Source: Selaginella moellendorffii (taxonomy: Eukaryota; Plantae; Lycopodiophyta). Taken from it: a stretch of 64,000 nt of DNA. Below are positions 21,884 through 47,085 of this stretch, in pieces. The position numbers and the translations under genes are program-made. The DNA is taken from assembly GCF_000143415.4 (NCBI RefSeq), contig NW_003314278.1, positions 900,682 through 964,681 on the forward strand. The letters run 5' to 3'. Position 1 is the stretch's first letter; each line of letters starts with the position of its first letter. A model generated the notes under the pieces. It searched no databases and was not told the origin of the DNA. It worked only from the letters and a program-made list of their open reading frames with translations.

Positions 21884-21990
21884 TCTGCTTGCTAATTATC
21901 TTCCAAGACCACTATTAATTTAGGGGGCTTTCGCACCCACCATTAACTTTGTAAATTTAATGGTAATTTGTTCACACCATTACATTATTA

Positions 21991-25667: not shown

Positions 25668-25720
<53 letters not shown>

Positions 25721-26592
25721 GCCACTGCTGTCGTTTATCAGATACCGATATGTAGTGGTGCTCAAATTTTGTATCCTGGATCCACATGAGAATGATGTGA
25801 TAGCAAAGAGCAAGACTTACCTATAGCATTAAGTCGACTCTACTATTAGGACTTCTAGATAGCCTTTCTGTCACCATACTACCATAAAAAACTGTGACAA
25901 AACCATACCCCAACCGAAGAATTTCCTCTAGCTTTGACAACAAAACTTACAAAGAACTATGATTACCTGTATCCCAAGATATTCATTGACTTTCTCCAAA
26001 AAGAATAGATATCAGAGGTTCCACTCTGTAATCAGGACGAAAGGATAAATGTAAACACTGGTCACACAGAAGTATATTGATACCTATAGGTGAGAGGATC
26101 ATATGGGTGAAATATGTTCATCATTTGCCTGCATGCTGGCTTTTTTTCTTCAATGCCTTCATCTTCCCAGTACTCATCACCTGTTCTTATGCAAACACAT
26201 TCAAACGACATTGCAAAGACCGTAAATCATATACATGCCGTTCTAAAGTATACATTATGGAGACTCAGAAACAGTGGTGATTCAACTGTGAAAAATGTGA
26301 GAACGAAACTTATCAATAGTGAAGAATCAAGGAGCTCGCTCTCCTTGTTTCGTTCCCAATGCTGCACAGTGACACAAGAGAGAGTCAAACATGAAACCTT
26401 CAGATATGAACAGCCATAACATAAATACATAAGCGCTCCTGGAAAAATGCATTGAAAAAAATTGGTTTACCCTAAAAAAAAAACGTTCCACCCTCAACTG
26501 TTTTTTCCCACGTGTCTTCATCTCCACCATTAAGCTCGTAAAGAATCTCGATTGAATATGTCGCCCTTGCTCTTTTAAATATAGAAGGATGA
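21991..26592 (-). mobile_element. Non-autonomous Helitron with captured gene-like fragments
   Basis: On the - strand it starts TCATCCTTCTATATTTAAAAG and ends with hairpin CCAGC-AGA-GCTGG then TTCCTTGCTAG, inserted between A and T. Its first ~165 bp match 52992-53158. A PPR-like piece (LINLLTRGGRIEEEAH) lies at ~24650-24780. Confidence 0.8.
24881..25865. repeat. Diverged direct duplication (~24881-25110 vs ~25490-25865) with a (CT)n microsatellite at 25672-25717
   Basis: Shared blocks gaccctrcaagatctt, tccctgtccctcgcac, gccactacgtacatgtga, gctggtgatgctgctgctg and ggacttctaga. Confidence 0.8.
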
Positions 26593-29199
26593 TATTAAAT
26601 TTGTAAACTTTAATTTAACTATTAAATTTAATGGTAACTTGTTCACACCAGAAATTAACATTAAAATAAGCTAATGTTTCCATTAGCATTTCTTATGCAT
26701 TTTTCGCTAAAATCCTAATCTTACTCCCTTATTTAAACGTGCTATTGGCATATGGCATCCGGCGTCTTTTATTCCATTTTTAGAATATTATTTATGAATA
26801 TGCTTATAATCTAATGGTTCAAATTCAAAAACTTCAAATAGACGGCATAGATCAAGTGCCAAAGGGGTGGCAACGCTTCAATGTGATTTTAATGACGTTC
26901 CAAATCAAGGAAATTTTTAGGGCAGATTGTGAGCTGCAAGCTCTGTCTGTCTCTCTCTCTCTCTCTCTGTCTGTGTCACAACTTGGCTGCGGGACTCTCC
27001 TTCCATGCTATAAGTTGGTATATGGAAGGTAAGCTTTTCTGGATTCCACTTCAGCCTCCATTGTTTGTTCTTGTAGATGCAAGAATTGGCTGCGATGTCT
27101 TCAAATTCCAATGCCCTGGATTGAGCTGGCCATTGCGTACTATTCTTCTGTCAAAAGGAACATCCTAGAGAGGCGAGAACTGGCTGGTTTGCATGTGGTC
27201 AACAAGTTCAGCGCTCCATACCAGAGCACTGACGAGCATCCTGCAGAACCTTTTTATTTGCCAAGGACAGTAAGTTGCATATGCCAAGATTGAAAAGAGC
27301 CAGGTGATACGTTCACCATCAGCAGCTGATCAGGTTTAGGAGGTAAGTAACTCTCCTCAAGTGTGTTTGACAGGCTGTTTGTTTCCTTGGTCGTTTCAAT
27401 AAAAAAAGAAAGTGGACTATTGCGGGAAGAGGCTCTCCTTGGGTTCCATGAGAAAGCTCTGGAAATTAGCAGGTAACTCCTCAGGTTTTGTGTTCTTTCG
27501 GGTGATCTGATCTTGTGTCATGCCACTCAGGCCAGGAAGCACCCGGCACTGGCCAATGCAGTGGGTCAGCAATTAGAATTTATCTGCTTGACCCAGGGGG
27601 AAGGACTGGTAATTTTATTACATTGTTTATTTGTTCTTGCCTTGGTGAAAAGCTTAGTTTCAGTTGCTCAATCCTTGACGTGATTCCATCTGAATAGCAT
27701 ACCAATTTTCTTATGTGCCAGAACGTAGCTGGTTCAAACTGTTCTCAGCTGTGGTGAGTTGCTGATTCAATCTTTCAAAGTAACAGTAAAACCAAATGAT
27801 GAACAGAATGTGGTAGAAGTTGCAAAATCCTTCAATCTCTTTAGGCGAGAGCTGGACGGAAATTGGGCTTGCTGGCCTTGGTGGCAGTGAAACCTTGGCG
27901 GCACCAATGATAAAACTACTGGACGAGGCCTTTTGTTGTCCTCCTCTTGTGAGTATGCCAGGCCAGCAAGGGAACGCTTGGATTCACTTGCAAACACAAG
28001 TACAGAACTCCAACATTCGTTCTTGCTTCCTCTTGGTATTGCTCTCATGTTTTCCATTGCTTTCACTTATGCTCTTTTTTATTAGTGTGGCTTTATAATG
28101 GAGACGGTCCTTCTCAGTCTGAATAACACCAATGATATTTGTCATTCATGAAGAAAGTAGCATTTATTTCGACAAACATCGTTACTTTTGAGCTGAGTCC
28201 CAGTCCGAGTGAAGATGGCAGCGATGATCCAGCAGCAATTCTATAATGCAAGCAGCCTGATCGAGGTGGGACCTCTAGGATTGATGTTGTCATGTACACT
28301 TTTGCTATGTCATCGAGCTCACCAGATATATGTGCCTTTACATTCTCAACTCCTTTCATTTGCTCACTTTGTGTATGTTTCAGAGAGAAAGATGACAAGT
28401 CATGTTTTTCTCGATCAAATGAGTGAGGTAAGAGAGGTCTCTTCCCTTTTGTGCCATTGTAAACTACACATCCAGTCTTGTGATTATTTTTACAAACTGC
28501 TGTGGCATTCAAGCTAATGGCTCACAATCAATACAACTATTCTTTATATTGTTATTGACTCTGATATCTTTGTGGCACTTTTCTTTCTCATTGATGTGGA
28601 TCACTTACTGATGTTTGATGTTTCTGTAGGAGAAAAGATGGATCGGAAAATGAAGATGTAAAAATGTGAAAATGAAGTAATCTCAGCACATAATAGTAAG
28701 GATTGCAGGTTTAATCAACCTTAAACTCATGACACTGTGTCCAGGTAATTTATGGTAAAGTAGAATATGTCGAATTCTAGAAAAAGTAGTTGTTCTTATT
28801 TCCAATGAATGAGCTTTTGGAGGTGCTTGTGTGTTTTACAGCCTGGTTTTCCTATTGCAGGTCTCCCTTCTTATTCCCAGGAGTGGCAGAAAGGCTGGGA
28901 TTTATTTATTTTGGTTCTTTTGATTGGAAACTACTGAGATTCAGTGTTGAGCTCTAATAATGAAAGGCAGAGAATTTATGGTTGCCATATTCTTGCAGTG
29001 GGGATACAATCCTGAAATTTTGTGTTTACAGTTTTGGAGCCGATCAAAATATCCAGTATTTGCTTGAAATTTCCCAACGAGGAGTGCACTGCGAATACAG
29101 CAGTGGTGCTCTCGAGTTATCGTCACTGGAGCCACTAATATGAACGTGACTGGCTGCTCAATTAATCAGACACCATAGTTGAGTGCCAACGCTGTACCA

Positions 29200-30240
29200 T
29201 TATGGGGTTCTTCCTCCTCTATCACTGGAAAGCAACATGGCAGTGACTGTTTGCCGACATTCTCGAGATTTTTACACAAGTGGTACTATGAGCCGGTGCT
29301 AAAGCCGGGACAGCCTCCACTTCCACCGGGTCCGCTTGGATGGCCCGTCTTTATCAACATGGCTGCTTTTCTCAGAGCCTTCAAGTCTGGGTTACCATAC
29401 TCTTTCATGGGTCACTTCTTGGTTTCAGGTATAATCGAGTGGGTTTTACAAGGCATTTCTGTTCTAGCAGCCCACCGTCCTGGTTGCCACACCAGAGGCA
29501 TGCAAATTCGTGCTCTCCAAAGACAGCTTTGAGACAGGATGGCCAAAGAGCGCTGTTGTGCTCATTGGACGAAATCTGTTTGCGAGATTAACTGAAGCGA
29601 GCTACTTGAAGCTCCAGAAGCTTACTGAGTCACTGTGAACAATCCCAAAGCTCTTAAGCAGTACGTGCCCCTACAACAGCATGCCTTGCAAGGTGGTCTA
29701 CGGAGCATAAGATTGTTCTTCTTACCGAGATGAGAAGGGTAAGTGATGTTTACTTCCTCTCTGTCTTATTTTCTCGTTGATACTGGTTTTTTCTGATATG
29801 ACAGTTCACGTATCTAACTGTCCTCTACATTTTATATAGGAAAGACTCCAGTCTCGATGTGGATGAGATTTTCTCCTTGTACTACATTGTCAACCAAGGC
29901 ATTCAGGCTTTCCCCATCAACTTCCCCAACACTACCTACAACAAAGCCTTGAAGGTAAAAGCCATATGCATTGTCTTACATAGTTTTGTGATGTTTTCCC
30001 ATTCTCAGGCCAGGTGAAAGGTCATCAAGCTTATCCAGGACCTGATCAACCAGCGAAGAGCTTCTAGAAAGACACAGGAAACAAGCATTCTTTTGTTGCT
30101 CATGGATGAGCTGGATGACAAAGGAGAGTCTCTGGAAGCGCTGAAATCATAGACATGCTCAACATGTACATAAACGCTGGTCACAACTCGATGGCTGATG
30201 GTTTCCTAAAGCAAAATCCTGATGTGCTCGAGAAAGTGAA
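29200..30240 (+). pseudogene. CYP88: CYP88-family (ent-kaurenoic acid oxidase-like) P450 fragment, frameshifted and truncated before the heme motif
   Basis: WYYEP...LPPGPLGWPVFINMAAFLRAFKSG, RYNRVG, PTVLVATPEACKFVL, FPNTTYNKALK and IDMLNMYINAGHNS (I-helix). Introns are retained. Multiple frameshifts and stops. Confidence 0.85.
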
Positions 30241-32781
30241 GATAAACATTTACAATTTCATACAAACTTTCCTTCATACAATCTTTCTTCTTTAGGCCAC
30301 ATCCAGACTATTCTGTAAAAGTTTCAAACTTCTGTAAGTATAAAAAGATAAAAGTATTCTAGTGAATTGTACCTCATACAAGATGATATCCTATGTATTC
30401 TCATGCCTCTATTATTCTAATTCATCCCTGTCACTTCTGTATTTGGAAGGAAATGCTATTTATGAAAACTCTGCATTTATGTTTACCCTTTGCTCCAATG
30501 GACCTAACGAAGACATGTTCAAGACAGATGCAAACTGGCAGGTATTCTTAAAGAACCATAGAACTGCACATCATCTCTTTAAGGGAAATTTATGAGGTGC
30601 TTGTAAGGCTCTAAAGTGTTAACCTCCTCTGGATGGCATCTGAGGAATGTCTAGGGAATGAGAAACTGTAAGCTGTAGCATGATATTTTCTTGCTCTAAT
30701 AAGTAGTTAAATAGAAGCTGCCTGTTGTAGCCTTTGTGGCTTTGCTTGACTACAAACCAATGCTTACAAGGTCAGAATGACACAAGCAGATATTCATAAA
30801 GATGTATTGTATTTTGCTATTTAGAGAAATCTTTGTATATATTCCAAACATACAATTCTTAAGAACATCTCAAAAATATCATTAATTTTGTAGAAAACTC
30901 TTCTTTTGAAGACTTAAGAAAATTAATCTCACTTATAAAAATCCTCGACAAATATCAAACTTAAAATTAATGTAAATCAAAGCTATATATGTGAATTGTA
31001 AGTTTTTTTAAGAAATTCATTTAGGAAATACCTTAAAGTATATATTATATGTTAATAATTATATTATGTTATACTTTAAAAATTAAAAAATGTCATTATA
31101 TTATTCTTGTATATTGTAATATGTTAGATCTAAGTTTATTTATTTATTTTTATGTTCTTTATAATGAACATATCAACAATAAAACTTAGAGAATGAAGAA
31201 TTTAAAACTTTATTCACAAATGATAATGTTGAAACAACAATACATATTATTTTAAAATAAAATTAAATTAAAATTATACTTCAATTTTAATATATTTTGA
31301 GAATATTATTATATTATATTAAATATAGTATTAAAAATAAAAAAATATGATTATATAAATATGAATGTGCTAGATGTAAGTTTCTAATAAATTTTTTAAT
31401 ATTTCTTATAATCTAAGTTTGTTTATAATAATGTTCTCCTTTAGATAATTGCTGAATATTAAGCATTTTTGAATAATCTAATAGTAATTTTTATATTTAA
31501 ATTTTTTAGCTATTTAGCTATATATGATTTTAAATCCTTCAGTAATAGACAATCTTGCAGAATTTTTCTTAAACTTTCAAAGTTCCTTAGAAATTTTGAA
31601 ATTAAAACTTCTAGCATGATATTACCTAAATATAATCCTTAGAAATTTTGAAATTATAACTTCTAGCATGATATTACCTAAATATAATCCTAATGAACTA
31701 TAGTTTATAATTTTCAACTTTATGGGTTACAATCTAGATATTTAATTTTAGAGTTGCTCTACTAATTTTTAACCTAAATCACTTTTCATGAGAATTTCGT
31801 ATAGACCAGTCTTTTAAATATTTAAAATTTTATTTCTATTAAATTTCTTTCTTCTTATTCTAAGTTTTTCTTTCTCAAATATTTTTTTTCTTCATCATTT
31901 AACTTTTGTAGTAGTTATCTTATATATTATAACTTACAAAATGTGTTACATACTCTTGATCTATTAGTAACTTATATTCTGGTTAGAAAGGTTTTACACA
32001 TGTATTAATATTTTTTAAATAATATCTAATATAAGTATTTAATAAAATAGATTTTCTATCTTTACAGGCTGAGTTGTATTTTTCTCACAAATGTGACATA
32101 TAATTTTACTCTATTTCGAGACCATTAACGTTTTTTTATAAAATACTTAATTTACCATTTGAACTAATACGATGTTTTCCCTATGCTTAGGTATGATTGA
32201 TATAATACAAAATTGAAACAAAACATAAAGCTCATGTAAAGTTTTAAGATAAATCTATACTAATGCTTTATAATAAAATTATGCATTCATGTCGCATTAA
32301 TAACATGGTATCTAATATGGTATAAGCTATCTCATACATATTGAAAGATCAAATCCATTTCTTGATTATATCCCAGTTACATGAAGATTTAAAATAAAAT
32401 AAAACAATTGTTATTAGCTGAAAGAATAATATAAAATTATAAATTATAACATTATACTAATGAGTTTGATAAAAATTATATTATATTAAAAATATTCATA
32501 AGAACATTTGAAAAGAAAGAAGAGATATTTAAGAGTACATAAAAAACTTTATTTATACTAAATCATTAAACAAATCAAACTAAAATCAAATAGTCATATC
32601 TGAAAATAAATATTTAAAAAATAAAAAATAATTATGATTTTAGGTGAATTGTCAGTGAGAGTAAATTCAAAGAATAAAAAATAATATTTTGTTATCTTCT
32701 GCATAACATTATTTAGCTTTATTTAATATTTCTAATAAATTTTTTACAAGTGATTTAAAAGTTAAATTAATCAGCTTTAAA

Positions 32782-32881
32782 NNNNNNNNNNNNNNNNNNN
32801 NNNNNNNNNNNNNNNNNNNNNNNNNNNNNNNNNNNNNNNNNNNNNNNNNNNNNNNNNNNNNNNNNNNNNNNNNNNNNNNNN
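32782..32881. other. Assembly gap (100 N) in a very AT-rich stretch
   Basis: Run of N. Confidence 1.
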
Positions 32882-34199
32882 ATTAAGCTACATGCTTAAA
32901 ATAATTTAATTTATGGATAGATGTAATTATGGTTTTAATGTTTCATGAAAATAAATTAGTCACTTTTAATAAAAGAACATATATGAAACACAAACCCAAA
33001 ATATGAATAAAAATGAATAACATATGTTTCAAATTATAAGCTTGGATGGATCATTAGTAAGTTGTAGTAAAAATTATATTCTCTTTTGAAGAAGTCTCAT
33101 TCTTGAAGTGTATTCTTGATGTTCCTACTATTTGACCTTGGAAATAAAAGAAATCCACAAGAAAGTCCCATAGGATTTACTAGGCTAACATATTTGCATG
33201 ATAGGGTTTTCAAAAAGTTATCTAACTTTAGGCATCTAGGAAGTCATATCACTAACTTGAGTGATGGGTAAATAAGAAATCAAAACTCAAATACTTACAG
33301 TTTTTTTTTTATTTTCTCAAGGATATTTTTCTCATATGAAGTTCCCTTACTTTACTTTAATCTAGCCCCTATTTCAAAATATATATTCTTGGTAACAGTT
33401 TTTCAATTTGCCTTTACTTGCTGGAATTAAGCTTAATATTTGATAAACTAATTTGGAAAGGTATTCTTTTTTACTAAAGTGAACCTATGATAGAGGGTAA
33501 ACATATCTCACAAGTGTGTTGCTAAAATGATGTATTAATTGGAAGAAGGAATCATTGGCACAAGAGGGCATTCTTTTAGATTTGCAACTATAAGGAGTAA
33601 AAGGGTGTAGTTGATGGGACAAATGTTCCTTCTTAGAGAGGAATGAAACAAATATTCAGTAACAAATAATGACTTCCTAATGCACTATGTGCTCATCACA
33701 TTTTATCTTATAACAACAGGTGTTTTATATAAGTTCAAGTACCAACTTAGCATAGTTGCTAGCACTTTTTGAAGTCAAAGGAATCCCTCCCTTTTCTAAT
33801 AGCATTTAAAAAAACAGAATGACAAATGATAGCTGTAGCAATGAAACTCACAACTTCATGGACAATTCAAAAATATGGTATAGGGGATTGTCTTGATATA
33901 TAAAACTTAGTCAACACAGTTTCCCATGATAAATTATTTCAATAGCTACGACAAATTAACACACCATTAGTTGTCATTGAATAAATATATGTCATTATTC
34001 TTGTATACTATCAAGGAGTTAAATAGATTGAATGCACTATTTGCATTAAATAAGGATGTCCACTGTGTTTAGCTTACACATGAATGCCCTTGAGAGTTTA
34101 ATGTGGCATTAAAACTTTTTGGAGATCCATATAACTAACCATTTCATTCTCACAATAAAATCTATGGAAGGTAGTCTGCATTGTAGTTAGATCTATTAG

Positions 34200-35600
34200 G
34201 GTCAAAATTTTCTGTGAACCTGTCATTCCTTTTGATCATCAAGGTATGCAGCACACAGCAAGACATGATGTTGTTCACAAGGATGCCTAGATGTCCTCTA
34301 AATCCCTTCTAACCAAGAAATTTCTATTGCCTCTTTAAAATTCCAAAAGATTGCTTGACAACAATCCTCATAGAAGAATGAAGAAAGTTGTATTGCTCTT
34401 TGCCATGAAATTTGTTTGGATATAAGACCAAAACCAGTAAAACACACTTTTATCCTCTGTCAGCAATGATATACAATGGAATGTCCCCAAACGCTGTGTG
34501 GTATACTGGACCACATAAACACTTCTTCTCTATCTATGCCTTCTTCAAACCACTAGAATTCCAAACTTGTCTATCTGGAGCACTACCTACTATCCCTATT
34601 GTTATGTAAGGGAATGAAGTCTTACTGTCTATCACAACTTGAACTACCATTGAGTAGTACTTTTTTGCCTTAGCATACCAATCTATTGCATCCTCTGAAC
34701 CTAGGAGCTTGATTGCCATATGAGTGCAATCCATTGCACCACAACAACTTGGGAATCCATACAATCTCTGAAATCATGCTATATCTTCATTTATTCCCTC
34801 CTCATCTGCCAATGGATCATTAGTCCTTCATGCTCAAGCAATGAATACCTGAATCAACATAAACAAGCTTGAGTGCATGAAGCCACTCTAAATGCATCAC
34901 CAATTATTTGCCATATATCCCTGAATGCCAAGCGTTTCAAAGCAATAGCTACTTGCTTTGAAATAGCTAAGTGCTACTTTGGTATTTCTACCAAATCTAG
35001 AAGAGGCCTCCTAGCCAATTTTGGAGCAAGCTCGTCACAAAGAAAAGTGAATGTAGATATTAAAAAACTTCTCTAAATCTTTGTGGATTTATATGGAGAA
35101 CCTAAAGCTCTGTTTGATACCACCAGTGGAGACTTCTTGGCTTGATGTAATCCACACTGATCAATGCCCTAGGAGCTCCTTTTTAGTTATCACTTTTTCA
35201 ATAAATGAAGTTGCAGTAGGACATGGCATAGAAAGCACTATAGCAATCGCTTCCTCCACCATTTGAATGAACAAAAGCTTTCTTGAAACTGGAATTAAGA
35301 TCATGTCCTCCTCCAGAAAGAACAACTCTACCAAATTTAAGTACCTCATCACAATCTCTACAGCATGGGAAATGATTGCCAAGGAAGAATTGCCAAGCTA
35401 TGGCATGCTATGCACTCAATTTAGGGTAAAAAAAAATGGCACCCTAATCCATTATGATGTGGAAAAAAAGAAGCTAATGTGTAGCCTTATGTGGCATATA
35501 AAAAAGAGGGTTACATGTAATGTAACCATTAAAAAAAAAGGAGGGGAAAGTTGTGGGGTGAGGAGAAATTTCCAGGTGGGTGGAGCATGGAACCCCACCC
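34200..35600 (-). mobile_element. PIF/Harbinger DDE transposase (HARBI1/DDE_Tnp_4-like) remnant with one TIR end
   Basis: GAMDCTHMAI, YSMVVQVVID, GSAPDRQVW, NFLHSSMRIVVKQSFGIL and CCVLH motifs, with stops. TIR ...GGTGGAGCATGGAACCCCACCC|TAA ends at 35600 and is the same family as 52836-58126. Confidence 0.85.
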
Positions 35601-36244
35601 TAAGGGAACTACTCCTTATTCACATGGGCATAAATTAAAAATGCCTTGAGATGGAAAATGCTTAGTAGTCTATTGCTTAACCCCAATGAGCTTATAGAAG
35701 TGATGAACCTGATCTAGAATGACCAAATAATATACCAAATTGAGGAATATGATTAAGCCACCTCTTCATGTGTTGAATAATTCTTTTAAGCTTTGAGTCC
35801 AAGCTTGTATTATTCTATTCCAGTAAACCATTTAAGAAATAGTGTTTGGTTGCAATCACTAAGTAAAAACTAAATAAACCAAGTGCTTGTTATATATTGA
35901 ACTTAAGCAAGTTTTAATAAATTGTTCTCTTTTTAGAATTAACATCTAACTATCCCAGCGGAGCTGGGTTCCCTGCTAGTGCTACACTTTTGTAGCATTA
36001 GGATTAAAATATTCACGAATATTCTATAGGGCTTTCACTTGCTTTCATTTTGGCGTGGTGTGCGGTGCGCGGTGTTGTTGGCTATGAGTACTGGTGATGC
36101 CCATGGAGCAGCGAGGCATGGTGTTGGCAAGCGTACCACGGCAGAAACGAGGTAAGAGATCAATCCTAGGCATTTCTAGGCATTTCTAGCACATTTTAGA
36201 GCATTTTACTTCTAGCCAAGCATGCTATGGATGACTAGAGCAGG

Positions 36245-36600
36245 TTTTCACGGTGTTGGTGTTGGAGGTCTTGGCTTAGGTTCTCACGGTGTTGGTGTTA
36301 GAAGTCTTGGCTTAGGTGCTGGTGGAACTCTTAGCCCAGATTCTCACTGTGTTGCTGCTGGAAGTTTTGGACCAAGTGCTGGTGGAAGTCTTGGTGCAGA
36401 TTCTCATGATGTTGCTGTTGGAGATCTTGGACCAGGTGCTGGTGGAACTCTTCTTCCTAGAGCAAGTGCAAGCTCTCACTGTCTTGCTGTTGGTGGAAGT
36501 GGAAGCAGTGGTAGTGAATCAGGTGTAGGAACTCTTGTTCCTAGTTTTGGAGCTACTACAAGTTCTCATGGTGTTGCTACTAGTGTTCCTGGTGGAGGTA
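36245..36600. repeat. Degenerate minisatellite (~33 and ~54 bp units)
   Basis: Repeated tctca(c/t)-g-tgttg(g/c)tgttgg...ttgg units give a Gly-rich ORF on + and a Pro-rich frame with periodic TGA on -. Confidence 0.7.
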
Positions 36601-39108
36601 TCATGAGTTTTGGTGGTCCAAGTGTTCGTGATCGACAATCCAATTGGTTTTCTTAAATAGATTCATATGATATTGCTAGAGCAAGAGGGAAATAGCTAGC
36701 ACTGGATATTTTGAGAAGATTAGATTGAGCAGTAGCATCGCAACATTGGATCACTAGCAGCAGCATCGCATAACTGCGATGAAGGATCTTCACTGGGAAA
36801 TTTCGAGCCAGCATTGGATATTTCAGGGCATAAATAGTTAAATCCAAAGAAGCGCCACCTTTAAATGGCATGTTGTAAAAGGTATAACTTATAATAGCTG
36901 GTGTGAACATAGCATCATTAAATTAGCTAATTTAATGGGAGTGTGAACCAGTTAACATTATCCAAAGTTTTTATCACCCAAAATGACTAATAACTACTAA
37001 TGCTATTATTAACTAATATTGGTGTGAAAAGAATAACATTAAAGTTTTAAATTAGGCTAAAATCCTCTGATGTAAAAGGCATAAATTAATGGTGGGTGCA
37101 ATAACCCCCTTAGACTCATAACTATTATCAAAACTTGTCTCTATGTTTCCCTTCACTTAACCTTTTAGACCACTATTAACTTGAACTAACAACCTTCATC
37201 CTTGTCCAACACTGCATATAGGAGGTCAAACTCACCTTGTTCATTCTTCACATCCTCTTTATCCCCTTTTTGAAAGAAAAAAAGTTTTAAAACCCTAGTT
37301 TTGTTTGGACTCACTATACTTACTTTACTCTGCCATCAACAAATGTCATTGGCTTTGATAAAGTAAGAAGGGGATAGCGAAACTCATAGCCAAAGGACAT
37401 CATTGTAGAAAAGGATTGGTTCAGGCTACTAAGTATCTACTTAGTTGAAAGCATTTTTTATCGAGTTTGTGGGACAAAAGCGTGACTGCCAATCTTTGAT
37501 AGCATACACCGGTCCAGAAACTTTTTCATGGGGTCATGCATCCATTCCAATTTCCTGCTGCTTATTAAAAAGACCTGGCATAGCTGCAGTGATAGTGTAA
37601 ATAAGATCCTACGTATTCCAACCACTAAAGTTGCCCCATGTTTTAATTTTCAAAAGGTAGTTAGTTCGCAGTATCTAGCAATCGCACTCAGAGCGGTGTT
37701 ACAGGACCCAGGAGGATTCCTTATTACATTAGCTTCTGAGCACATTTGGGGCCCGGTATTCATCCGGGTCGACTGGGGAGCATCCCGACCCTGATTCCGG
37801 GCATGGGATCCTCCAGGAGGAGCCCTCGCCATATAAGTGGCTTAAAAATAAAATTTCTTGTTCCTTTGCAATGCGCCAGATCCACACAGCATTATGTAAT
37901 GTGTAGCTTGGTGGGTTTAATGTAGATCAGAAAATCCCAGCTAGCGCACATGTCTGGATCATTGTCCTCCAGACCAACGTGATAAAGCTGGAATCTCGCG
38001 TTTTACATTATGTTCTGAGCTATGCTCCACAGGTTGCTGGAGGCAACGGGCTGGTGCTTGGAAGCCCATATATAGCACCGAAACGAACTCAAAATTTATA
38101 TAACGTTTTTAATTGTTGATCGCTGTCTAGGCAGGATGCTCACACTTGGAAACAGTAGCATTTGAACATTCATGTGACTGTCACCTGGGAAGTCTAGCAT
38201 TTCCAACACACAAGAAAATCAAATTTCTAGCAGCACATTGATAGCTTTTAACATCCATAAGCCGCTAGCATCTTCCCCGTGGTCAACATCAATCGTTCTT
38301 AGCTCGCTTGATCTTTTGAAGTATTTTCTTTAGTGATTGAACCGAAAATATACCCATATCAATTTTCTGCCTAAACATGCATCTTACCGATTAAGTGTTG
38401 AGCAATTTGGAACGGTTTCTTATAGTCGTTGGATACCAAGAACACCATCAGGTAGCAGCATATCAAAACAGAGTGCCAATTCGTCATACACCAGACTTCC
38501 ATGACCACTGTCCTGCTGTATTAATCAATCAAGACCTTTGTGAGATCTGGGTTAGCGCACACATTGGCACTGTAGCGCTACTTCTGTATCATCAGTCCTG
38601 CTACGGGAACAAACCCAGTAGATCTGCTTAACCTACAATGGCCCACATTGCAGTCGGAGCTCAATGGAGCAACCCTGGCTGCCTTACCTATTTAAAGTAT
38701 GAGGTAGTGTGTTCCACCCTCAATGCCTCTAATCATCCGCTTTATTTGATTAAACTCGGTAAGAGCTCCAGCTATACTATCCTGAGGGAAACTTCACAGG
38801 GTACCAGCTATTCTATGGTTTAATAAATGGCCCCTATACCAGCAAGTTCACCATCCTTTGGACCCAGAGCTTCAGCAATCTTGCTTATCCCACTGCACAG
38901 GCCCGACTGAGCAGCTCGAAAGGAGCTCTCCTTTGAGCCCAGCAGGACTGGTAAAATACCTTGACCGAGACCATGCATCTATGATTACTTGTCTTAAGAA
39001 TCAACTCCGCTGTAGCTTTAGCTAAGGAGGCAATATATACAACCGTGTTGGAGCTGATTTCTCTAAAGAAAAGATTGACATGCAAAATATGAATTGAGAT
39101 ATCCAAAC

Positions 39109-41072
39109 TTATTTCCCAAACAATCTTGGAGAATCATCGAAGCCTGTTTTCTTCATTGTCACTATCTCTTCAAATAAGATTGTTAAACTCGATTTTGCCA
39201 GCTCTCTAGAATGCAGACCATGGCATACAACCTGCTAAAACATAGGAATTGTGAATGCATTCTCGTTTAAATACTCTTTCAAACCTTTGGCATGATTCCG
39301 ATTATTGCTGCCGCTTCAAGAATATACAAAACCAGGTCCTCTGGCTCTACTCCTTTGCACTGCGGTGCTTAGTGAAAAACATAAAACACAAGTAAGCTGA
39401 AGTCACATTACTTACCTTGTTAGTTAGTTGTGCAAGTCTTGCACATGGTGAAGCAAAGCAATCGTCAAGGTCAAATAAGTCTATTTCTGGTAACTTTGGT
39501 TCCTTCAAAACTGGGGAAAACACAGCGGGCTGAAGAGGTGGTAATGGAGTCTCAAACTAAAAAAAGCCACTCTCAATTTCGTAAAATGAAAAAGCCACTC
39601 ATACCTGAGGTGCGATCAGTGTCAAAGGAGCATGCTTAACTCCAAGAGATCTATACAAATTACCCGTTTCAGGTATTAAGTCTGTGTGGTACTTAAAAAG
39701 ACTGTTGTCAAGAAGCTGCGTAAAGTCTTTGGGTATATCATCGGCCTCCTGAAAAGACTTCAACATGAAATTCCTTCAAGAGAAACCTTACTTGTAAGCA
39801 ACAACGTAGTCGGTTAGCTAAAGCTTCTGTGTTTGGGATTTGTTCAAGTTCTCTAGCATCCGGTTCCTCAATGTTCACTTTTTCCAGCTGAAGTAAGACA
39901 GTTAATGACCTTTGCGGATAATGTTGTACCTCAAGAGACTTTTCTTTATAAAGCCAAAGAAAGACAAAATCTGAGAGCGTAGCGTTATCTTCCTTGTCTA
40001 GCCAGACATCCTCAAACATTGCTACGCTTCCAGTCACAGCTACTCGTCCTTTGCCTTTAGTTCCTTGCCATAATGCTCCTGGAATATTCAATTGAAATAG
40101 GGAAAACTAGACTTCTTGAAGAGTACCAATGGAGCACTGCACTGGTTGAGACATAAACCCAGAAGAAAGTATGGTTGTTGCCGGTTTTTGAACGCTTAAT
40201 GTAGTGCCATATGGGTATAGAAATCGAAGTTCATTTCTTGAATTATCATATTCAATATCGTCAGGCTCCCAAAACCTGCTTATTATCCTATTATTATTAT
40301 TGAACGAAGAAAAAAGTTCACACCTTGGATCTGAATTGTATTCTCGCCCGCAAAAACTTCTACCTGAAAACTATAACGAAAAAATGTTTAATAAAATACT
40401 TGAATGACGAGTATTAGCTAATACTTCGTTCAGTTCTTCACATATGATACCATCTGTCACAATAACTTCTTTGGGATGAAAATACTTATCCTGAATGGTC
40501 TGGACCTGGAAAACATACAGGTCCATTGTGTCATTTAAATAAATTCAAGTCCTCACCACTCCATCGGAATTGATTGTAATCCCGTATTCTTGCGTCAAAT
40601 CGTTTAGATTCGTATTTTGGGCGATATCACCACCTTCTTTGCTTAGAAAAATCACTGAACCACCACTGCTTACATAGGATCGCAAGTTGTCTATCTGGTT
40701 TGATTTCATGGTTTATCTCTGTCTATTAGGACATAGATTTTACCTCCGCCGTGCTGAATTTTTCCCTTGGGCATCCAAATATAATGATAGAAGCTTCTTG
40801 CAGATTTTCCAAAGAAAGCAAGTTTTTGTATCTGACAGGAAAACAATGTGACATATGGAGGGAGGTGGGAGGGAATGAATCACATTGACACTTTAAACTT
40901 GCTTCGAAGCCTTCTGGCAAGCTGCTTGAAACCTTGTGAAGGTGTATGAGACTCTAGCAAGCAGAAATTAACCCCAAGGAGTGCACACAATTAGCTTACC
41001 GTGCTTAGAGCAATCAAATAGAAGTAAGGGGAGTGACACAGGAACACTATTGTGAGCAGCAATGTCTGCCAT
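39109..41072 (-). CDS. IFT52: Intraflagellar transport protein 52 (IFT-B), multi-exon
   Basis: LLFDCSKH, SQGFKQLARRLRSKF, IIFGCPREKFSTAE, EGGDIAQNTNLN, KYFHPKEVIVTDGI, FLYPYGTTLSVQKPA, GSVAMFEDVWLDKEDN, LRCCLQE, PAVFSPVLKEPKLPEIDLFDLDDCFAS and RLAQLTNKC. Short GT-AG introns. Confidence 0.93.
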
Positions 41073-41370
41073 TGCCCTTAAAACCTAATTAGTAAAATAC
41101 GCTTAACGGTGTTGACCGAGATTAATATTTTCTCGCAAATGGGGAGCAACACACGAATCCAGTCACCTTAAAGGTTCTGTTTGGTGGAATGGCTAACAAA
41201 ATAGTGGGGAGGAGAGAGCAGGTGGCAGTACGTTGCTTGGGGCAGGGGATTGTGCAATCCAACATCACCTGGATCGAAAGCTGGGGGCATATTCATTGTA
41301 CGTTAAGTGCTCAAACAACACAAAATAAAAACCCCACAAGTATAATGGTTTCTTGCTTGTTATGGTTATA

Positions 41371-44300
41371 TCAGCTTCCAGCGCGCAATTCGTCTAGGAT
41401 TGTAGACAGCTTGTTCACCTGGATTCCGACTGATGTTAGGTATTTCGTCAGTCACAGGCATGGACTTGCCTTAGACGTTGACAGGGCCTTCATCCTCTCC
41501 AGCTCTTTAAGATCATTCTCAAGATGGGAAACCTTGCAAAAAGATTCCGTCAGCTCCTCGTCTTTCAGCTTTAAAGCTGTAGCAATATTTCTCTCTCTTA
41601 TCTGCAAATCTTAATTAAGCAAAGGACAAGTGAAAACTCTCGGGTACCTCAAGTTCAAAGTTCACCCCTTTTATATGTTCCATCTCAGCCAGGACATGCA
41701 CTAGTTTTTCTTCTACTTCTTTCTTTTCCTAGACAGATTACCAAAATAAGATGTGTAAAATTCTGTTTAGGCACCCACGTTGGTTGTTGAATGAAACTTC
41801 TCATTGGCTTGATCTCTTTCTAACGCGATTGACTTTTCTCGGTTTTCATATAGGGATTTAACCCGATTTATCTCCTCCTTCACGTATCTGAATTACAAGT
41901 TTAACGGGTTTCAAGAAATAGCAGATACCTTAGCATCTCGTCCTTTTCACTTAGTTTATTCTTGAGGATGGAGTAGTCATGTTCCAACGTTAGAAAGGAT
42001 TTCTTTTGCAATCTTATTTCTTCTTCAAGCTCATTTATAACCATATCTTGTGCCGATACTTCTTTCCTTAATGCTCGACCCTAGGCAGAAGCATATTTAA
42101 GAAAAAAGATTTAACAGCATAATCCACCTGCTCAACTTCATCTCGGAATCTGGTGCTCCACTCATTTTCAAGTAGATCCACCGAAGACTTCACCTCCTTT
42201 AAAGCGTTTTTTGTGTGAGATAGTTCGAGCTTCAATTCCTTGATGCTATCATTTTGACAATCAAGCATTTTTGTTTTGATTCGAACCGCATCAGTACTTG
42301 TTTCAAGTTGTTCTGAAATGGAACTGAGCCGTGTACTGAGCTTTCCTTTTTCCTCCTTGAGAGACTGAACAAGATTGCGTAGAGACTGTTCTTGACTTTG
42401 TCGTTCTTTGTCTCCAGCCTTTGAGGCTTCTATACATTTGTTTAGCATGTCATCTGACATGGCTGCCTGCTTTCTCAAGGAGACTGCTTCCGCTCTAAGT
42501 GTTTCTATTTCCTGGCAGATCAAGAAATTACGAATTCGGCATATGTAATATGCATACCTCAGTGGATGCTGCAATTTCAGCTTGTGTGGACTGCAGCTTC
42601 AGCTTCTGTGCACGCAATAAAAGTCAGCAAGTACATTTTGCTGTTTCCTCGAACCTGTGAGTGCACAACAACAGTAAGCTCTGCTAGAAGCGCTTCAGCA
42701 TCTTGCTCCTAAACACAAAGGAAGCGTTAGCTCAAAATCAAAGCTGACAAACGCACCTTTTGGATAACAGTTTTTAACGCATCTCGCAAATCTGCATTTT
42801 CTCGGGAAAGCTCCATGCGTATCTTCTCCGTGCGTTCTACACTTGTTTTTCTTTCTGTTTGCAGTTCATGAATTTGTGAGGGAGGAAGAGTGAGTAACGA
42901 CACACCTTCATTAGCTAGTTCCAGTTCTCTTTCAGTAGATTGAATGTTACATCGTAAGTACTCAAGTTCTTTCTTCCACTTTGTCGTAATTCGTAGCTGC
43001 TCAGCTTCTTTTTCCTTTTCAATAGCAGATGCTAACTCTTCATCATGCATTCTAGAGCAACTCAACAAGAACAACGTTAAAATATACTACGTGAATTCTT
43101 ACAGGCTCAAGCGCGTGATCTCCTCTTTCCATTCACTCCGTTCTTTTGCCAGTAAATTCGAGAGTCTTTTAACCTCCTCGTGAGCTAGAGCTTCTTTGCT
43201 TTTGAACGAATCCTAATCTAAAAGCTGACAAAACTGTAAAAGAAAAGATACCAAATTTAGTACCAGCTCGTTACTGCAAAGTTTCAGTTTTGCTTGCTCC
43301 TCCTCTAAAGATTTTCTTAGGCGTGACATTGCATCCTGTATATGTTTCTTTTCGGCAGTGACGTCTGTTAAGGTGCTCTCTGCATTCTAAAAGAAAAGAC
43401 AATAGAATGACACAAGCAACTGTTGGAGCTTACCTTGTGCAAGTAGGTAGCTACATCGAGTGACTCTTTTAGAGCTTTATTTTCCGATTGGTGGGTGAGT
43501 AGTTCTGCTTTGGACCTTTCAGAATCATAAAGGAGCTCCTGTATACGTTGGGCAGTATGCGATCCATCGTCCTTTCCTTGGAAATCTAAGCTTCGTAACG
43601 CGGAACCCACATGTTTTTACCTTAGGTCTTTCCTGAGGCATGAAGAAACATTCCTTCGCAGGACCTGGTGAGTGTTCCCTTTCTTTACCTCCATGGTTCG
43701 GTGAATGTACCATTTTTGGATGTTTTCTTTTGAAAAGGTCCTTCTCGACATTTGTAACCTCGGTTTGAACCTCACTAATCTGTTGGAAAGCGCATCATAG
43801 TCAGTTCCTCATTAAAAATGTAGTTGTACCTCCTTACGCATTTTTGGTGGTTCTAATGCATGGTCGACATCCTGCAAGGTCAAATAGTTCAGGAACATAA
43901 AGCAGTGACACAGGAACCCGTACTGTGCCTTTCTTGCGGCCTTTATTTGAGGTGCTCTTCATAGTGTCCAGTACTTCCATTAAACGAGCTTCAATATTTT
44001 CTAGCCGACTCTCGTGGTCATCTTTCCAGGGAATGGACTCTGTTGGCAATAAATCGTCATTTACCTGAAAAATCTTGCTCTCATCTCCTTTCTTTCCCAC
44101 AGGGTTCCCATCTAAATATTGTAGGTGTGGAATAGCCGCAGCCAGTGTTGCATGGTAGCATTTTTCCTGACAGACGGGATTTGTATATTTTCCATGTGAA
44201 AAGAAAAGCTCCTTGAGATGAGTACATCCAGCAAGTTGCCATAATTCAGCAGGCGATTTTACAAAATTGTCTCTTAAGTCTAAATACGTGAGCCTGCACC

Positions 44301-44783
44301 AATATTCCAGTTAGCAGCAAAACAAAGAACCTCTTACCTGGCCGATATGCCACTTAATTTTGAAATACGGTTGTGTGACAGAACAAGCTTGCTCAGCGAA
44401 ATGAGGGATTCCAGGCCTGCTATTTGCTTTACTCGGTTGCACGAGAGATTGAGAACTCTAAGGCTTTTTAAAGTTGATAAGCCTTCGATGCTCTCAAGAA
44501 AATTGGAGGACAAATTAAGTTCCTTGAGCAACAAGAGTCCTTCCAGTCCTTCAATTTTGTTGATATGGTTGTTGTGTAAGCTCAGGAACTGTAGATTCTT
44601 GAAACTCGACAGGCCCACTATGGAAGTAATAGAGTGCAGCCCTGCCCCGTAGATAAAAATTTCCCTAATCTCCAAATCTGTACTATTGGACAATATGCGA
44701 TGCTGCAAAGATAAAATTAAAATACCTGTCTTGCGAGGGTTTTGAGCTCGTACATCATAGAGCCGTGGTGCATTGTTTTCCAT
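41371..44783 (-). CDS. LRRCC1-like: Leucine-rich repeat plus long coiled-coil protein, LRRCC1/VFL1-like (basal body); start uncertain
   Basis: SDS22-type LRRs (LSLHNNHINKIEGL, LNLSSNFLESIEGL, LNLSCNRVKQIAGL). LRR cap NPVCQEKCYHATLAAAIPHLQYLDG. Many heptad-rich exons follow, down to VNKLSTILDELRAGS* (last intron probably GC-AG). Confidence 0.75.
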
Positions 44784-45275
44784 TACTGGCACGCTGCACT
44801 TAGGGATCTGCAGCAGAGTATGGTTTTTTGTTTTTACGTTTAGAAAATGCCAAGAAAATAGATGCAATAATGAAAAGAAACTTCATCATAGGTGAAAGAA
44901 TCTGATCCAAGCGTGATGCTAAGGGCATTTTCAGTGCCTAGACGTAATCCATGCAAGAATTCAAGCATCACCTCGCCATCCTAAAAGGCGAAGTCTGAAT
45001 ATCTCCTTCTTTTTTCATCTGGAGGCCAAATGGCTCTGTGATTCTTAATTATTTTATTCACAATATTATGAAATCAAATAAATCTCTCCAGGCAATCAGC
45101 CTCTTATTTTCTATTAGTGCTGATAAAATGGCTGATGCAACAAGCCATGAGAAGGCCAGCCCTTCCCCAAGAGTAACCACCGCCATAAAAGTATCCAACC
45201 CTATTTGGACACGTGTTCTGAGAGGCCCCATTATCCTGTCCTGTGGTTCTGTATCTCCTATCTAGGATAGCCTCT

Positions 45276-46228
45276 ATGGTAATGTACTAACCCTGCACTT
45301 GTTGCTGAGCAAGGATCTACTTTGTGCAGGGATTAGTGTCATTGCTCAAGAGGATTTTCAAGCAGAAGGCCTGCTCGGTACTAAATTTGCATTCTCAATG
45401 TGTCTGGTGATCAAAAGCTTGAGTGTAAAGGAAGCGCGAATTCTTGTTCTTGGACTAGATAATGCGGGAAAGACAACAATATTGAGGAAACTCACAAATG
45501 AGTCTATTTATGATGTTGTTCCTACACAGGTAAATCTTGAACACTTTCACTTTAACGCTACAAGGACAATAGTGATGCAGGGTTTTAATATTAACTCCTT
45601 GTTGCGTGGAAAATTTAAGCTTAATGTATGGGATGTCGGTGGTAAGGATATTCATTCAGCATTCATAGTTTGACGCTGTTTTAATAAAGGTGAGCTTGCA
45701 AGCAGAAGCTATTGGAGGAACTATTGTGACCAAATTGACGGATTGGTTCTTGCACAGCAATCCAGGGTTCTTCTTAACTGCATTTACTTGCAGGTATATG
45801 TCATTGACTGTGAGGACAGAGAGAGACTGGAGGAAAGTGGTATGCAAGCTTGTTCAATACCATAATCTTGATATGTGACTAAAAATCTAGGTGAGGAGCT
45901 GATCAATTTCTTAGACGACGTCAAGGACAGAAAATTTCCAGTTCTTGTATTTGCCAATAAGCAAGATTCAGAGTTAGCAATTGCCGAGGATGAGGTAGTT
46001 CGTATTCCGTTTCTACACAGGGTTTGATCTTGTAAGCACAGATTACGGACGCATTAAATTTACATTATATTCGTCACCACGCTTGGCAAGTACATGGTTG
46101 TTCTGGTAAATAGCTTTCTCTGCCTATTGTGGGCAAAAGGTTTTATTTGTCCACTGGCAGCTCTGACTGGTGGGGGTTTACGAGAAGGTATGAACTGGCT
46201 AATGGAACAGCTTCAAAATGGCACCTGA
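45276..46228 (+). CDS. ARL3: ARF-like small GTPase ARL3 (ciliary), multi-exon
   Basis: ATG-only first coding exon (45276-45278), then GLVSLLKR, RILVLGLDNAGKTT, PTQGFNI, FKLNVWDVGG, YWRNY, YVID, PVLVFANKQD, LNLHYIR and CSALTGGGLREGMNWL. Confidence 0.88.
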
Positions 46229-46301: not shown

Positions 46302-47085
46302 ATGTTTGCAAGGCTTTGGCACTGGAGATGGGAGATTGATTTAGCCATTTCAATTTTTTTCCTAGCAAATATATCTACCGTCCTGCTTATTGAAACTCAA
46401 GCTTTGCTACCAACTTGGATATTTCCAAAGCTGCTCCAAGCACTGCTTAAATGGCATGTTCATGCAAATGGTGATTTTCTCTTAAGAAGGTCCCCGCCTT
46501 TCTATTTAGGTATTATTTCTGGAAATATTTTTATTCGAGTACCTCTTATGTTACTGAATGCATATGCATTTTATTATGGTATGCTTAAGGCGGTATTTAG
46601 AAAGATTGTAAAACATGCATGCTACAGGGAAAGCATGGGGAGATGCAACCGCTATCCTTTATGGAGTTCATACGACTAGCACATTGGTAGGATTCTGGAT
46701 CTCTGAGGATGCTTCTTACAGCTAGCATTCGTTTGAACAGATTCCACTGATATTTGAAATTTACTTTGCGAGAGTTTCTAAAAGACAGAGATTACTACTA
46801 GTATATTTACCTCAAGTTTTAGTCTCTGTTTACGTTCTAGTACGGGGTCTGATTGGCACAACTGACTTCGAATATGTTCCTGCAAAGAACTCAAGTGCTG
46901 CCAATATGTTCCTAAGTTTCTTTTACAGAATCCCTTTATTAAAATCATTAATATTTGGAAGCAAAGCACATACTCCAGCGCATCCTGCTATTGAAAATGC
47001 ATCGACCATTTCTAATAGCTGGCGGAGACGTAAAAGAAGAATGGGACCGAAAGTGGAGCATCCAGATCTAAAAAGATGGTTCTAA
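46302..47085 (+). CDS. TMEM97/EXPERA-domain membrane protein (3' end uncertain)
   Basis: IDLAISIFF...LIETQALLP..FPKLL..LLKWH...GDFLL..SPPFY, AWGDATAILYGVHTTST and LLVYLPQVLV. Four hydrophobic segments and short introns. Confidence 0.7.

What the first reader, a model, noticed from the sequence alone, without database searches (positions are those of the whole stretch)
39109..46228. Tight cluster of three unrelated ciliary genes (IFT52, LRRCC1/VFL1-like, ARL3), near a GEX2-like gene
Seen: the LRRCC1-like stop is ~300 bp upstream of the IFT52 ATG. LRRCC1-like and ARL3 are head-to-head, ~500 bp apart. GEX2-like is separated from them mostly by TE insertions. Known: in land plants cilia occur only on sperm, and these genes act in IFT, basal bodies and ciliary cargo release. 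Inference: four of the five intact genes in the window are plausibly sperm-related and non-homologous. This suggests a co-regulated male-gamete gene neighbourhood embedded in TE-rich chromatin.
Basis: partly seen in the sequence, partly recalled or inferred. Interest (0 to 1): 0.75.

Follow-up and report, generated by a model that had tools for sequence, protein, structure and literature searches.

The report
Sperm-cilium gene trio in spikemoss
In the spikemoss Selaginella moellendorffii, three unrelated genes of the kind that build sperm flagella (IFT52, an LRRCC1/VFL1-like basal-body gene, ARL3) lie side by side in 7 kb, with a gamete-adhesion gene (GEX2-like) 19 kb away; the grouping is real and fairly unlikely by chance, but nothing here shows shared control.

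Summary
The window is Selaginella moellendorffii: the ARL3-like gene (45276-46228, +, 9 exons) encodes exactly the NCBI protein 'ARF-like GTPase [S. moellendorffii]'. IFT52 (39109-41072, -) matches the three IFT52-specific Pfam families in order and is intact. Between them lies an intact LRR + long coiled-coil gene (41371-44783, -). A GEX2-like gene lies 18.6 kb away.

Three claims stay unproven:
- LRRCC1/VFL1 orthology. The architecture fits, but no named relative could be reached.
- Co-regulation. I found no DUO1 sites and no shared promoter words, and an unrelated TMEM97-like gene starts only 73 bp after ARL3.
- The spacer being 'mostly TE'. It holds one Harbinger transposase remnant and two repeat fragments.

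Under random gene order, a run of three ciliary genes appears in 0.7-22% of genomes, depending on the assumed number of ciliary genes.

The scan met this gene set before on another piece of the same genome (s1-374889), perhaps the other haplotype. It also noted other flagellar-gene clusters there.

Side note: this ARL3 has Glu in place of the catalytic Gln.

Verdict: a real co-expression-type neighbourhood of moderate interest.

The parts
15861..20521 (+). GEX2-like gene (many Ig/filamin modules). Outlying member of the neighbourhood, convergent with IFT52.
Evidence: Pfam Ig_GEX2_N in ORFs 16180-16650, 17053-17397, 17435-17776, 17804-18190, 18306-19376 and 19628-20089 (E 4e-07 to 2e-25), plus Filamin hits.
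20600..39050 (.). Gene-free, degenerate, repeat-bearing spacer between GEX2-like and IFT52. It includes an AT-rich stretch at 30-34 kb.
   Evidence: 86 stop-free segments were scanned against Pfam and only DDE_Tnp_4 was significant. Fragments at 20793-21018 and 21743-21886 recur in the TE-rich left flank. GC is 0.24-0.27 at 30-34 kb.
34537..34773 (-). Remnant of a PIF/Harbinger-type DDE transposase
   Evidence: Pfam DDE_Tnp_4, E 3.9e-10
39109..41072 (-). IFT52 gene (intraflagellar transport complex B core subunit), intact
   Evidence: Collinear Pfam hits: IFT52_GIFT profile positions 32-66, 60-111, 109-139, 150-193 and 192-236; IFT52_central 8-58; Itf52_C 1-16 and 17-36. A stop-free GT-AG chain exists with introns of 43-56 nt.
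41073..41370 (.). 298-bp spacer between the LRR-gene stop codon and the IFT52 start codon. It must hold the 3' end of one gene and the promoter and 5' UTR of the next.
   Evidence: Coordinates. No DUO1-type site and no words shared with the other promoter beyond chance.
41371..44783 (-). LRR + linker + long coiled-coil gene with LRRCC1/Vfl1p-like architecture (orthology unproven), intact
   Evidence: Pfam LRR_4/LRR_8/LRR_9 on exon 1, and a further LRR plus cap on the next exon. A stop-free 13-exon chain of at most 913 aa exists. The C-terminal ~580 residues are 49% E/K/Q/R/L with few P/G. The environmental fragment P0272 is collinear over both LRR exons.
44784..45275 (.). 492-bp divergent (head-to-head) intergenic region between the LRR gene and ARL3; a candidate bidirectional promoter
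   Evidence: ATG positions. No RRCSGTT or AACCG sites.
45276..46228 (+). ARL3-type Arf-like GTPase gene: 9 exons, introns 47-55 nt, with Glu in place of the catalytic Gln (DVGGE)
   Evidence: The exon chain translates exactly to P0001, 'ARF-like GTPase [Selaginella moellendorffii]'. PDB phmmer scores: ARL3 chains 187-199 bits, ARL2 162-174, ARF1 about 149.
46302..46676 (+). First exon of a TMEM97 / sigma-2-receptor-like gene. It is a non-ciliary neighbour that marks the right edge of the trio.
   Evidence: phmmer hit to PDB 7m93 'Sigma intracellular receptor 2', E 3.8e-08, residues 14-99 against 18-103. Its ATG lies 73 bp after the ARL3 stop.

Best explanation
This is a real, compact, probably lineage-specific neighbourhood of sperm-cilium genes in Selaginella moellendorffii.

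Three intact genes occupy 7.1 kb (39109-46228):
- IFT52, the core of IFT complex B, needed to build the axoneme.
- An LRR + coiled-coil protein with the architecture of the basal-body protein LRRCC1/Vfl1p.
- An ARL3-type GTPase, which in other organisms releases lipidated cargo and supports BBSome traffic at the cilium.

A GEX2-like gamete-adhesion gene sits 18.6 kb away, across degenerate repeat DNA.

In this plant cilia exist only on sperm, so the trio is very probably transcribed in the same cells, the spermatogenous cells. I read the locus as a co-expression neighbourhood. Genes with the same narrow expression have come to lie together and stayed there. The LRR gene and ARL3 diverge from one intergenic region of at most 492 bp, and IFT52 starts 298 bp behind the LRR gene. 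I do not read it as an operon-like unit with a dedicated common control element, nor as an ancient syntenic block.

Shown: gene identities (IFT52, ARL3, GEX2-like), intactness, order, strands and spacing.
Inferred: sperm-limited co-expression, use of a shared divergent promoter, LRRCC1 orthology, and any benefit of adjacency.
For: - Organism and ARL3: the exon chain equals NCBI protein P0001. P0001 scores higher against ARL3 than ARL2 or ARF1 in PDB, by about 25 and 50 bits.
- ARL3 presence correlates with cilia across eukaryotes (PMC9250359, abstract seen).
- IFT52: three IFT52-specific Pfam families hit in collinear order, and the reading frame is open.
- LRR gene: an N-terminal SDS22-type LRR block plus cap, a linker, and a roughly 580-residue coiled-coil-like tail. 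This matches the LRR, disordered region and long coiled coil described for LRRCC1, the Vfl1p orthologue (PMC8983040).
- The LRR gene is not one of the axonemal LRR proteins with solved structures. The best is DRC3 at 62 bits on the repeats only, and the cap piece has no PDB hit.
- GEX2-like: repeated Ig_GEX2_N domains.
- Chance: P(at least one triplet) is 0.0065-0.22, and P(4 of 5) is 0.0002-0.02.
- Earlier scan notes, unchecked here, report the same gene set on another piece of this genome and three further flagellar-gene clusters.
Against: - There is no sequence evidence of common regulation. DUO1-type sites are absent from both trio promoters, and the promoters share no words above shuffled expectation.
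- Close spacing also holds for the unrelated TMEM97-like gene, 73 bp from ARL3. Compactness is therefore a property of the gene island, not of the ciliary genes.
- LRRCC1 orthology is unproven.
- The chance estimate depends on an assumed number of ciliary genes, and it ignores that the scan looks at very many windows.
- No expression data could be consulted.
Confidence: 0.55

Rival explanations
1. Chance adjacency. The three genes simply happen to be neighbours in one of the compact gene islands of a small genome, and the grouping has no regulatory or selective meaning.
For: - With 500 ciliary genes, a triplet arises in 22% of random gene orders.
- The finding was picked post hoc from a very large scan.
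- The non-ciliary TMEM97-like gene is packed even closer, at 73 bp.
- No shared motifs were found.
- The arrangement is reported absent from four bryophytes (unchecked).
Against: - With 150-300 ciliary genes the probability is 0.7-5%. Counting GEX2, four of five falls to 0.02-2%.
- Earlier notes list three other flagellar-gene clusters in the same genome. If they are independent, three or more triplets have P <= 0.003 even at K = 500.
Confidence: 0.28
2. An actively selected regulon. The neighbourhood is a chromatin domain, bounded by transposon-rich DNA, that is opened as a unit during spermatogenesis. Adjacency is maintained by selection because it ensures coordinated expression.
For: - TE-derived DNA lies on both sides: Ty3 gag and RNase H at 1-10 kb, and integrase and chromo domains near 63 kb.
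- The LRR gene and ARL3 are arranged divergently.
- Several similar clusters are noted in this genome (unchecked).
Against: - No shared cis-element was found.
- An unrelated housekeeping-type gene sits inside the same island.
Spacing therefore appears unconstrained.
- There is no conservation in bryophytes.
Confidence: 0.15
3. The middle gene is not an LRRCC1/Vfl1p orthologue. It is another LRR + coiled-coil protein, possibly unrelated to cilia, so only two ciliary genes flank an unrelated gene.
For: - No named LRRCC1 or Vfl1p sequence was recovered by any search.
- The language-model atlas ranks generic LRR fragments, PPP1R7 and DNAAF1 clusters above an LRRCC1-like cluster.
- SDS22-type LRR + coiled coil is a common architecture.
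Against: - The architecture and proportions match the published description of LRRCC1.
- No PDB LRR family (DRC3, LRRC23, LC1, LRGUK, PPP1R7) matches the cap region.
- From memory only, and therefore a lead rather than a test: the cap ('GKYTNPVC') and a coiled-coil stretch ('DAVRIKTKMLDCQNDSIKELK') resemble human LRRCC1.
Confidence: 0.25

Closest known systems
Co-expressed gene neighbourhoods of eukaryotes, such as testis-specific gene clusters in Drosophila (own knowledge, not checked here)
   Same: Non-homologous genes with the same narrow, male-germline expression lie next to each other more often than chance predicts, with no polycistronic transcript.
   Different: Here co-expression is only inferred from function. 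The organism is a lycophyte, the genes all serve one organelle, and the cluster has only three genes plus one outlier.
Uni linkage group of Chlamydomonas reinhardtii
   Same: It is a genomic concentration of genes that affect the basal body and flagellar apparatus (PMC2120091, abstract seen).
   Different: That is a chromosome-scale genetic linkage, not a 7-kb physical trio. I did not check whether IFT52, VFL1 or ARL3 lie on it.
Plant metabolic ('operon-like') gene clusters such as the avenacin and thalianol clusters (own knowledge)
   Same: Non-homologous genes of one process are adjacent, lineage-specific and often embedded in TE-rich or chromatin-marked regions.
   Different: Those clusters encode successive enzymes of one pathway, and their co-regulation and chromatin signatures are documented. 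Here the products are structural and trafficking parts of a cilium, and regulation is untested.
Bidirectional (divergent) promoter gene pairs
   Same: The LRR gene and ARL3 start 492 bp apart on opposite strands.
   Different: Promoter sharing has not been demonstrated. Such pairs are common in compact genomes regardless of function.

Membership tests
IFT52 (IFT-B core subunit) | N-terminal GIFT domain | tested here: met
   Pfam IFT52_GIFT on five successive exon pieces covering profile positions 32-236 in order, best E 6.9e-14
IFT52 (IFT-B core subunit) | IFT52 central domain followed by the C-terminal domain | tested here: met
   IFT52_central E 3.9e-17. Itf52_C is split over two exons (profile positions 1-16 and 17-36, E about 0.004-0.005 each). 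Each piece is below the gathering score, but the two are collinear.
IFT52 (IFT-B core subunit) | Intact open reading frame | tested here: met
   A stop-free GT-AG chain runs from ATG 41072 to the stop at 39109
ARL3 (Arf-like GTPase 3) | Arf-family G domain, closer to ARL3 than to ARL2 or ARF paralogues | tested here: met
   Pfam Arf. PDB phmmer scores: human, mouse and Chlamydomonas ARL3 187-199 bits, ARL2 162-174, ARF1 about 149. The named best hits of the word search are ARL3.
ARL3 (Arf-like GTPase 3) | Catalytic Gln of the DxGGQ switch II motif (typical of the family, but not what defines orthology) | tested here: not met
   The sequence reads DVGGE (Glu72), both in the annotated protein and in the only in-frame GT-AG splice. 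91% of 35 full-length relatives have Gln and none has Glu. I file the gene as an atypical ARL3 orthologue, not a canonical enzyme.
ARL3 (Arf-like GTPase 3) | Presence restricted to ciliated lineages | not tested
   Literature only: ARL3, ARL6, ARL13 and ARL16 correlate with cilia (PMC9250359)
LRRCC1 / Vfl1p | N-terminal leucine-rich repeat domain, a disordered linker, and a long C-terminal coiled coil | tested here: met
   LRR_4/LRR_8/LRR_9 on exon 1 and a further LRR plus cap on exon 2. The tail is 49% E/K/Q/R/L with few P/G. Architecture as described in PMC8983040.
LRRCC1 / Vfl1p | Closest sequence relatives are LRRCC1/Vfl1p rather than other LRR families (orthology) | tested here: inconclusive
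   The representative search was swamped by multi-repeat prokaryotic LRR proteins, none of which matches the later exons. The word search sees only short proteins and returned unnamed fragments. The atlas was not discriminating. The full-length spliced protein was not searched.
LRRCC1 / Vfl1p | Localisation at specific triplets in the distal centriole lumen | not testable with these tools
   Needs microscopy in spermatids
DRC3 and other axonemal LRR proteins (rival assignment) | Strong similarity over the LRR block, the cap and beyond | tested here: not met
   DRC3 scores only 59-62 bits on the repeats. LRRC23, LC1 and LRGUK score lower. The cap-plus-linker piece has no PDB hit at E <= 0.01.
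GEX2 | GEX2-type Ig-like domains with filamin repeats | tested here: met
   Ig_GEX2_N in seven ORFs, six at E 6e-15 to 2e-25 and one at 4e-07; Filamin E 2.6e-12
Co-regulated gene cluster | Three or more adjacent non-homologous genes of one process, in excess of chance | tested here: inconclusive
   Adjacency is shown. The chance probability is 0.0065-0.22, depending on the assumed ciliary gene number. A genome-wide test was not possible.
Co-regulated gene cluster | Shared cis-regulatory elements | tested here: not met
   No RRCSGTT or AACCG sites in the trio promoters, and shared 8-10-mers at or below shuffled expectation. This is a weak test.
Co-regulated gene cluster | Co-expression and conserved synteny | not testable with these tools
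The metagenome scan gave three contigs of about 1-1.5 kb with no flanking genes. No expression data were available.

The most novel reading that the evidence does not exclude
Selaginella moellendorffii keeps its sperm-flagellum genes in several compact islands flanked by transposons. Each island works as a chromatin-level regulon that is opened only in spermatogenous cells. This locus would be one such unit, with a divergent promoter driving the basal-body gene and a GAP-insensitive (Glu72) ARL3.
Probability: 0.15. Interest if true: 0.7.

Novelty: new member of a known kind. Interest (0 to 1): 0.4.

Why it matters
Land plants with swimming sperm must switch on a few hundred cilium genes in one short-lived cell type, and how they do so is poorly known. 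If such genes are grouped physically in Selaginella, the compact promoters here (298 bp and 492 bp) are small, testable candidates for sperm-specific control regions. The genome would also offer a natural test of whether gene order helps tissue-specific expression in plants. If the grouping is accidental, the locus still gives clean gene models for IFT52, an LRRCC1-like gene and an unusual ARL3.

Tried and rejected
- Big representative search with the LRR exon. The top 150 were long multi-repeat, prokaryote-style LRR proteins. None matched the later exons by tblastn, and their sequences confirmed this. It was useless for orthology.
- Word search with the LRR exon, run twice. My first E-value cut was too strict. 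Only 17 short, mostly unnamed fragments came back, and none was named LRRCC1.
- Protein atlas on the LRR exon and on a coiled-coil exon. The neighbours were generic LRR or generic coiled-coil clusters.
- PDB searches of the cap piece and the coiled-coil piece. Nothing meaningful came back.
- Literature search for VFL1 or LRRCC1 in Selaginella or bryophytes, and for printed sequence motifs. Nothing was found, and the supplement of PMC5850483 is not held.
The metagenome scan with ARL3 gave three contigs of about 1-1.5 kb.
- DUO1-type MYB sites and shared k-mers in the promoters. None were found.
- I first suspected frameshifts in ARL3. I rejected this once introns of 47-55 nt were allowed, because the model then equals the NCBI protein.
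- I considered DRC3 as the identity of the LRR gene and rejected it on PDB scores.
Full report
**Organism and gene models**

A word search with the largest ARL3-like ORF returned P0001 as its top hit. P0001 is 'ARF-like GTPase [Selaginella moellendorffii]', 182 aa. Its sequence is identical to the protein I had spliced by hand from the window. A script that threads P0001 through the DNA finds one exact chain of 9 exons: 45276-45278, 45330-45377, 45431-45529, 45581-45641, 45690-45745, 45794-45839, 45891-45994, 46042-46105 and 46161-46228. All its introns are GT-AG and 47-55 nt long. The window is therefore S. moellendorffii, and its introns are very short. That explains why the gene first looked frameshifted to me.

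**IFT52**

On the minus strand, successive exon pieces hit the three IFT52-specific Pfam families in order:
- IFT52_GIFT, profile positions 32-66, 60-111, 109-139, 150-193 and 192-236.
- IFT52_central, positions 8-58 (E 3.9e-17).
- Itf52_C, positions 1-16 and 17-36.

The ATG is at 41072-41070 and the stop at 39111-39109. A stop-free GT-AG chain links them, with introns of 43-56 nt. The identity is secure.

**ARL3**

P0001 scores 187-199 bits against human, mouse and Chlamydomonas ARL3 chains in PDB. It scores 162-174 bits against ARL2 and about 149 against ARF1. The named relatives in the word search are ARL3. Published profiling shows that ARL3 presence tracks cilia across eukaryotes (PMC9250359).

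One oddity: switch II reads DVGGE, where the family has DxGGQ. The Glu is in the annotated protein, and it follows from the only in-frame canonical splice. Among 35 full-length relatives, 91% have Gln at this position and none has Glu. P0001 departs from the consensus at 9 of 68 columns that are at least 90% conserved, against a median of 1 for the set. It is an ARL3 orthologue by sequence, but probably not a normal GAP-responsive enzyme.

**The LRR + coiled-coil gene**

The ATG is at 44783 and the stop at 41373-41371.
- Exon 1 carries five SDS22-type repeats (Pfam LRR_4 E 1.3e-18, plus LRR_8 and LRR_9).
- The next exon adds one more repeat and a cap around 'GKYTNPVC'.
- The remainder is rich in E/K/Q/R/L (49%) and poor in P/G over about 580 residues.
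- A stop-free chain of 13 exons with introns of 41-90 nt exists, giving at most 913 aa. The method favours coding sequence, so the true protein is probably shorter.

This is the layout published for LRRCC1, the human orthologue of Chlamydomonas Vfl1p: an LRR domain, disordered regions, and a long C-terminal coiled coil (PMC8983040).

I could not prove orthology:
None of them matches the later exons.
- The word search cannot see proteins longer than 1.75 times an exon. It returned only short, unnamed fragments.
- One fragment, P0272, is collinear with both LRR exons: 57% identity over 56 residues, then 31% over 62 residues including the cap. A related family therefore exists in environmental eukaryotes, but it carries no name.
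- The atlas was not discriminating.

PDB gives a useful negative. DRC3, LRRC23, LC1, LRGUK and PPP1R7 match only the generic repeats, and the cap piece matches nothing. The gene is therefore not one of those families.

From memory, the cap and one coiled-coil stretch resemble human LRRCC1. That is a lead, not a test. I put orthology at about 0.75.

**Joined models**

I chained exons only inside scripts. The purpose was to test for an open frame, count residues and measure composition. No joined IFT52 or LRR-gene protein was printed or sent to any search or fold tool. The full-length search that would settle LRRCC1 orthology was therefore left out.

**Layout**

The order along the window is as follows.
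- GEX2-like gene (+), about 15.9-20.5 kb, with repeated Ig_GEX2_N and Filamin domains.
- An 18.6-kb spacer.
- IFT52 (-).
- A 298-bp spacer.
- The LRR gene (-).
- A 492-bp head-to-head region.
- ARL3 (+).
- A 73-bp spacer.
- A TMEM97 / sigma-2-receptor-like ORF (+), E 3.8e-08 to PDB 7m93.

The trio spans 7,120 bp.

In the 18.6-kb spacer, 86 stop-free segments gave only a Harbinger-type DDE_Tnp_4 remnant at 34537-34773. Two fragments, 20793-21018 and 21743-21886, recur in the retrotransposon-rich left flank. 'Mostly TE insertions' is thus plausible but only partly documented.

Both outer flanks carry Ty3-type remnants: gag and RNase H on the left, and integrase, SH3_Tf2-1 and chromo domains on the right.

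**More than chance?**

I assumed 22,285 genes, of which 150, 300 or 500 are ciliary. A run of three then appears somewhere in 0.65%, 5% or 22% of random gene orders. A window of five genes with four sperm-related ones appears in 0.02%, 0.26% or 2%. This is suggestive, not decisive, because the locus was picked post hoc from a very large scan.

The scan's own notes are unchecked by me. They report the same four genes within 13.5 kb on another piece of this genome (s1-374889). Given the two-haplotype assembly of this species, that piece may be the other haplotype, which is my inference. The notes also report three further flagellar or basal-body gene clusters (s1-402700, s1-346866, s1-408347). 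If those are independent, three or more triplets have P <= 0.003 even with 500 ciliary genes. That points to a genome-wide tendency rather than a single accident.

**Co-regulation**

Cilia occur only on sperm in land plants. Co-expression of IFT52, ARL3 and a basal-body gene is therefore likely on functional grounds.

The sequence offers no sign of a shared control element:
- The 492-bp and 298-bp regions contain no RRCSGTT or AACCG (DUO1-type) sites. The window-wide background is 0.23 and 0.47 sites per kb.
- They share no 9- or 10-mers, and their count of shared 8-mers is at shuffled expectation.

The unrelated TMEM97-like gene is packed even more tightly than the ciliary genes. The short spacers therefore reflect a compact gene island, not a special arrangement.

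**Verdict**

The locus is best described as a lineage-specific co-expression neighbourhood of sperm-cilium genes, a new example of a known kind of genome organisation. LRRCC1 orthology and any causal role of adjacency are still open. I found no paper describing flagellar-gene clustering in a land plant. [quoted passage not shown]

Noticed in passing
window:45641-45700 (ARL3 exons 4/5; residue 72 of P0001): Selaginella ARL3 has Glu in place of the catalytic switch II Gln (DVGGE instead of DxGGQ). It also departs from the consensus at 9 of 68 highly conserved columns, including K55N, L131S and R152H. It may be a GAP-insensitive or otherwise altered GTPase.
   Followed up: partly
window:46302-46676 (+): A TMEM97 / sigma-2-receptor-like gene starts only 73 bp after the ARL3 stop codon (PDB 7m93, E 3.8e-08). 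Pfam found nothing on this exon.
   Followed up: partly
window:39109-46228: Across the three genes, introns are 41-90 nt and mostly 44-56 nt, all GT-AG. Some stay in frame and stop-free, so ORF-based reading over- or under-calls exons.
   Followed up: yes
window:44337-44783 (-): The LRR exon had no hit above 49% identity among the best 150 representatives of the 1.84-billion-protein library, and no 100% hit in the word search. The gene may be unannotated or mis-modelled in public Selaginella annotations. This is not certain, because a single-stretch hit could have ranked below the list.
   Followed up: no
window:52051-52466: A dense array of overlapping direct repeats with 12-nt and 23-nt spacing. 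Long ORFs run on both strands across it (51720-52738), and only a weak KRTAP-like Pfam hit was found.
   Followed up: no
window:30000-34000: A very AT-rich stretch (GC 0.24-0.27) inside the GEX2-IFT52 spacer. It has a 52-bp tandem repeat at 31584-31691 and lies next to the Harbinger transposase remnant.
   Followed up: no
window:36222-36656 (+): A 144-aa ORF made of 36-nt and 60-nt tandem repeats (36242-36452) that encode a Gly/Ser/Val-rich peptide. It has no Pfam match.
   Followed up: no
window:46700-64000 (segment not resolved; not among the ten segments of 47.2-50.4 kb rescanned): One stop-free segment gives a weak DUF2358 Pfam hit (E 1.4e-04). This is possibly a sixth, non-ciliary gene to the right of the island.
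   Followed up: partly
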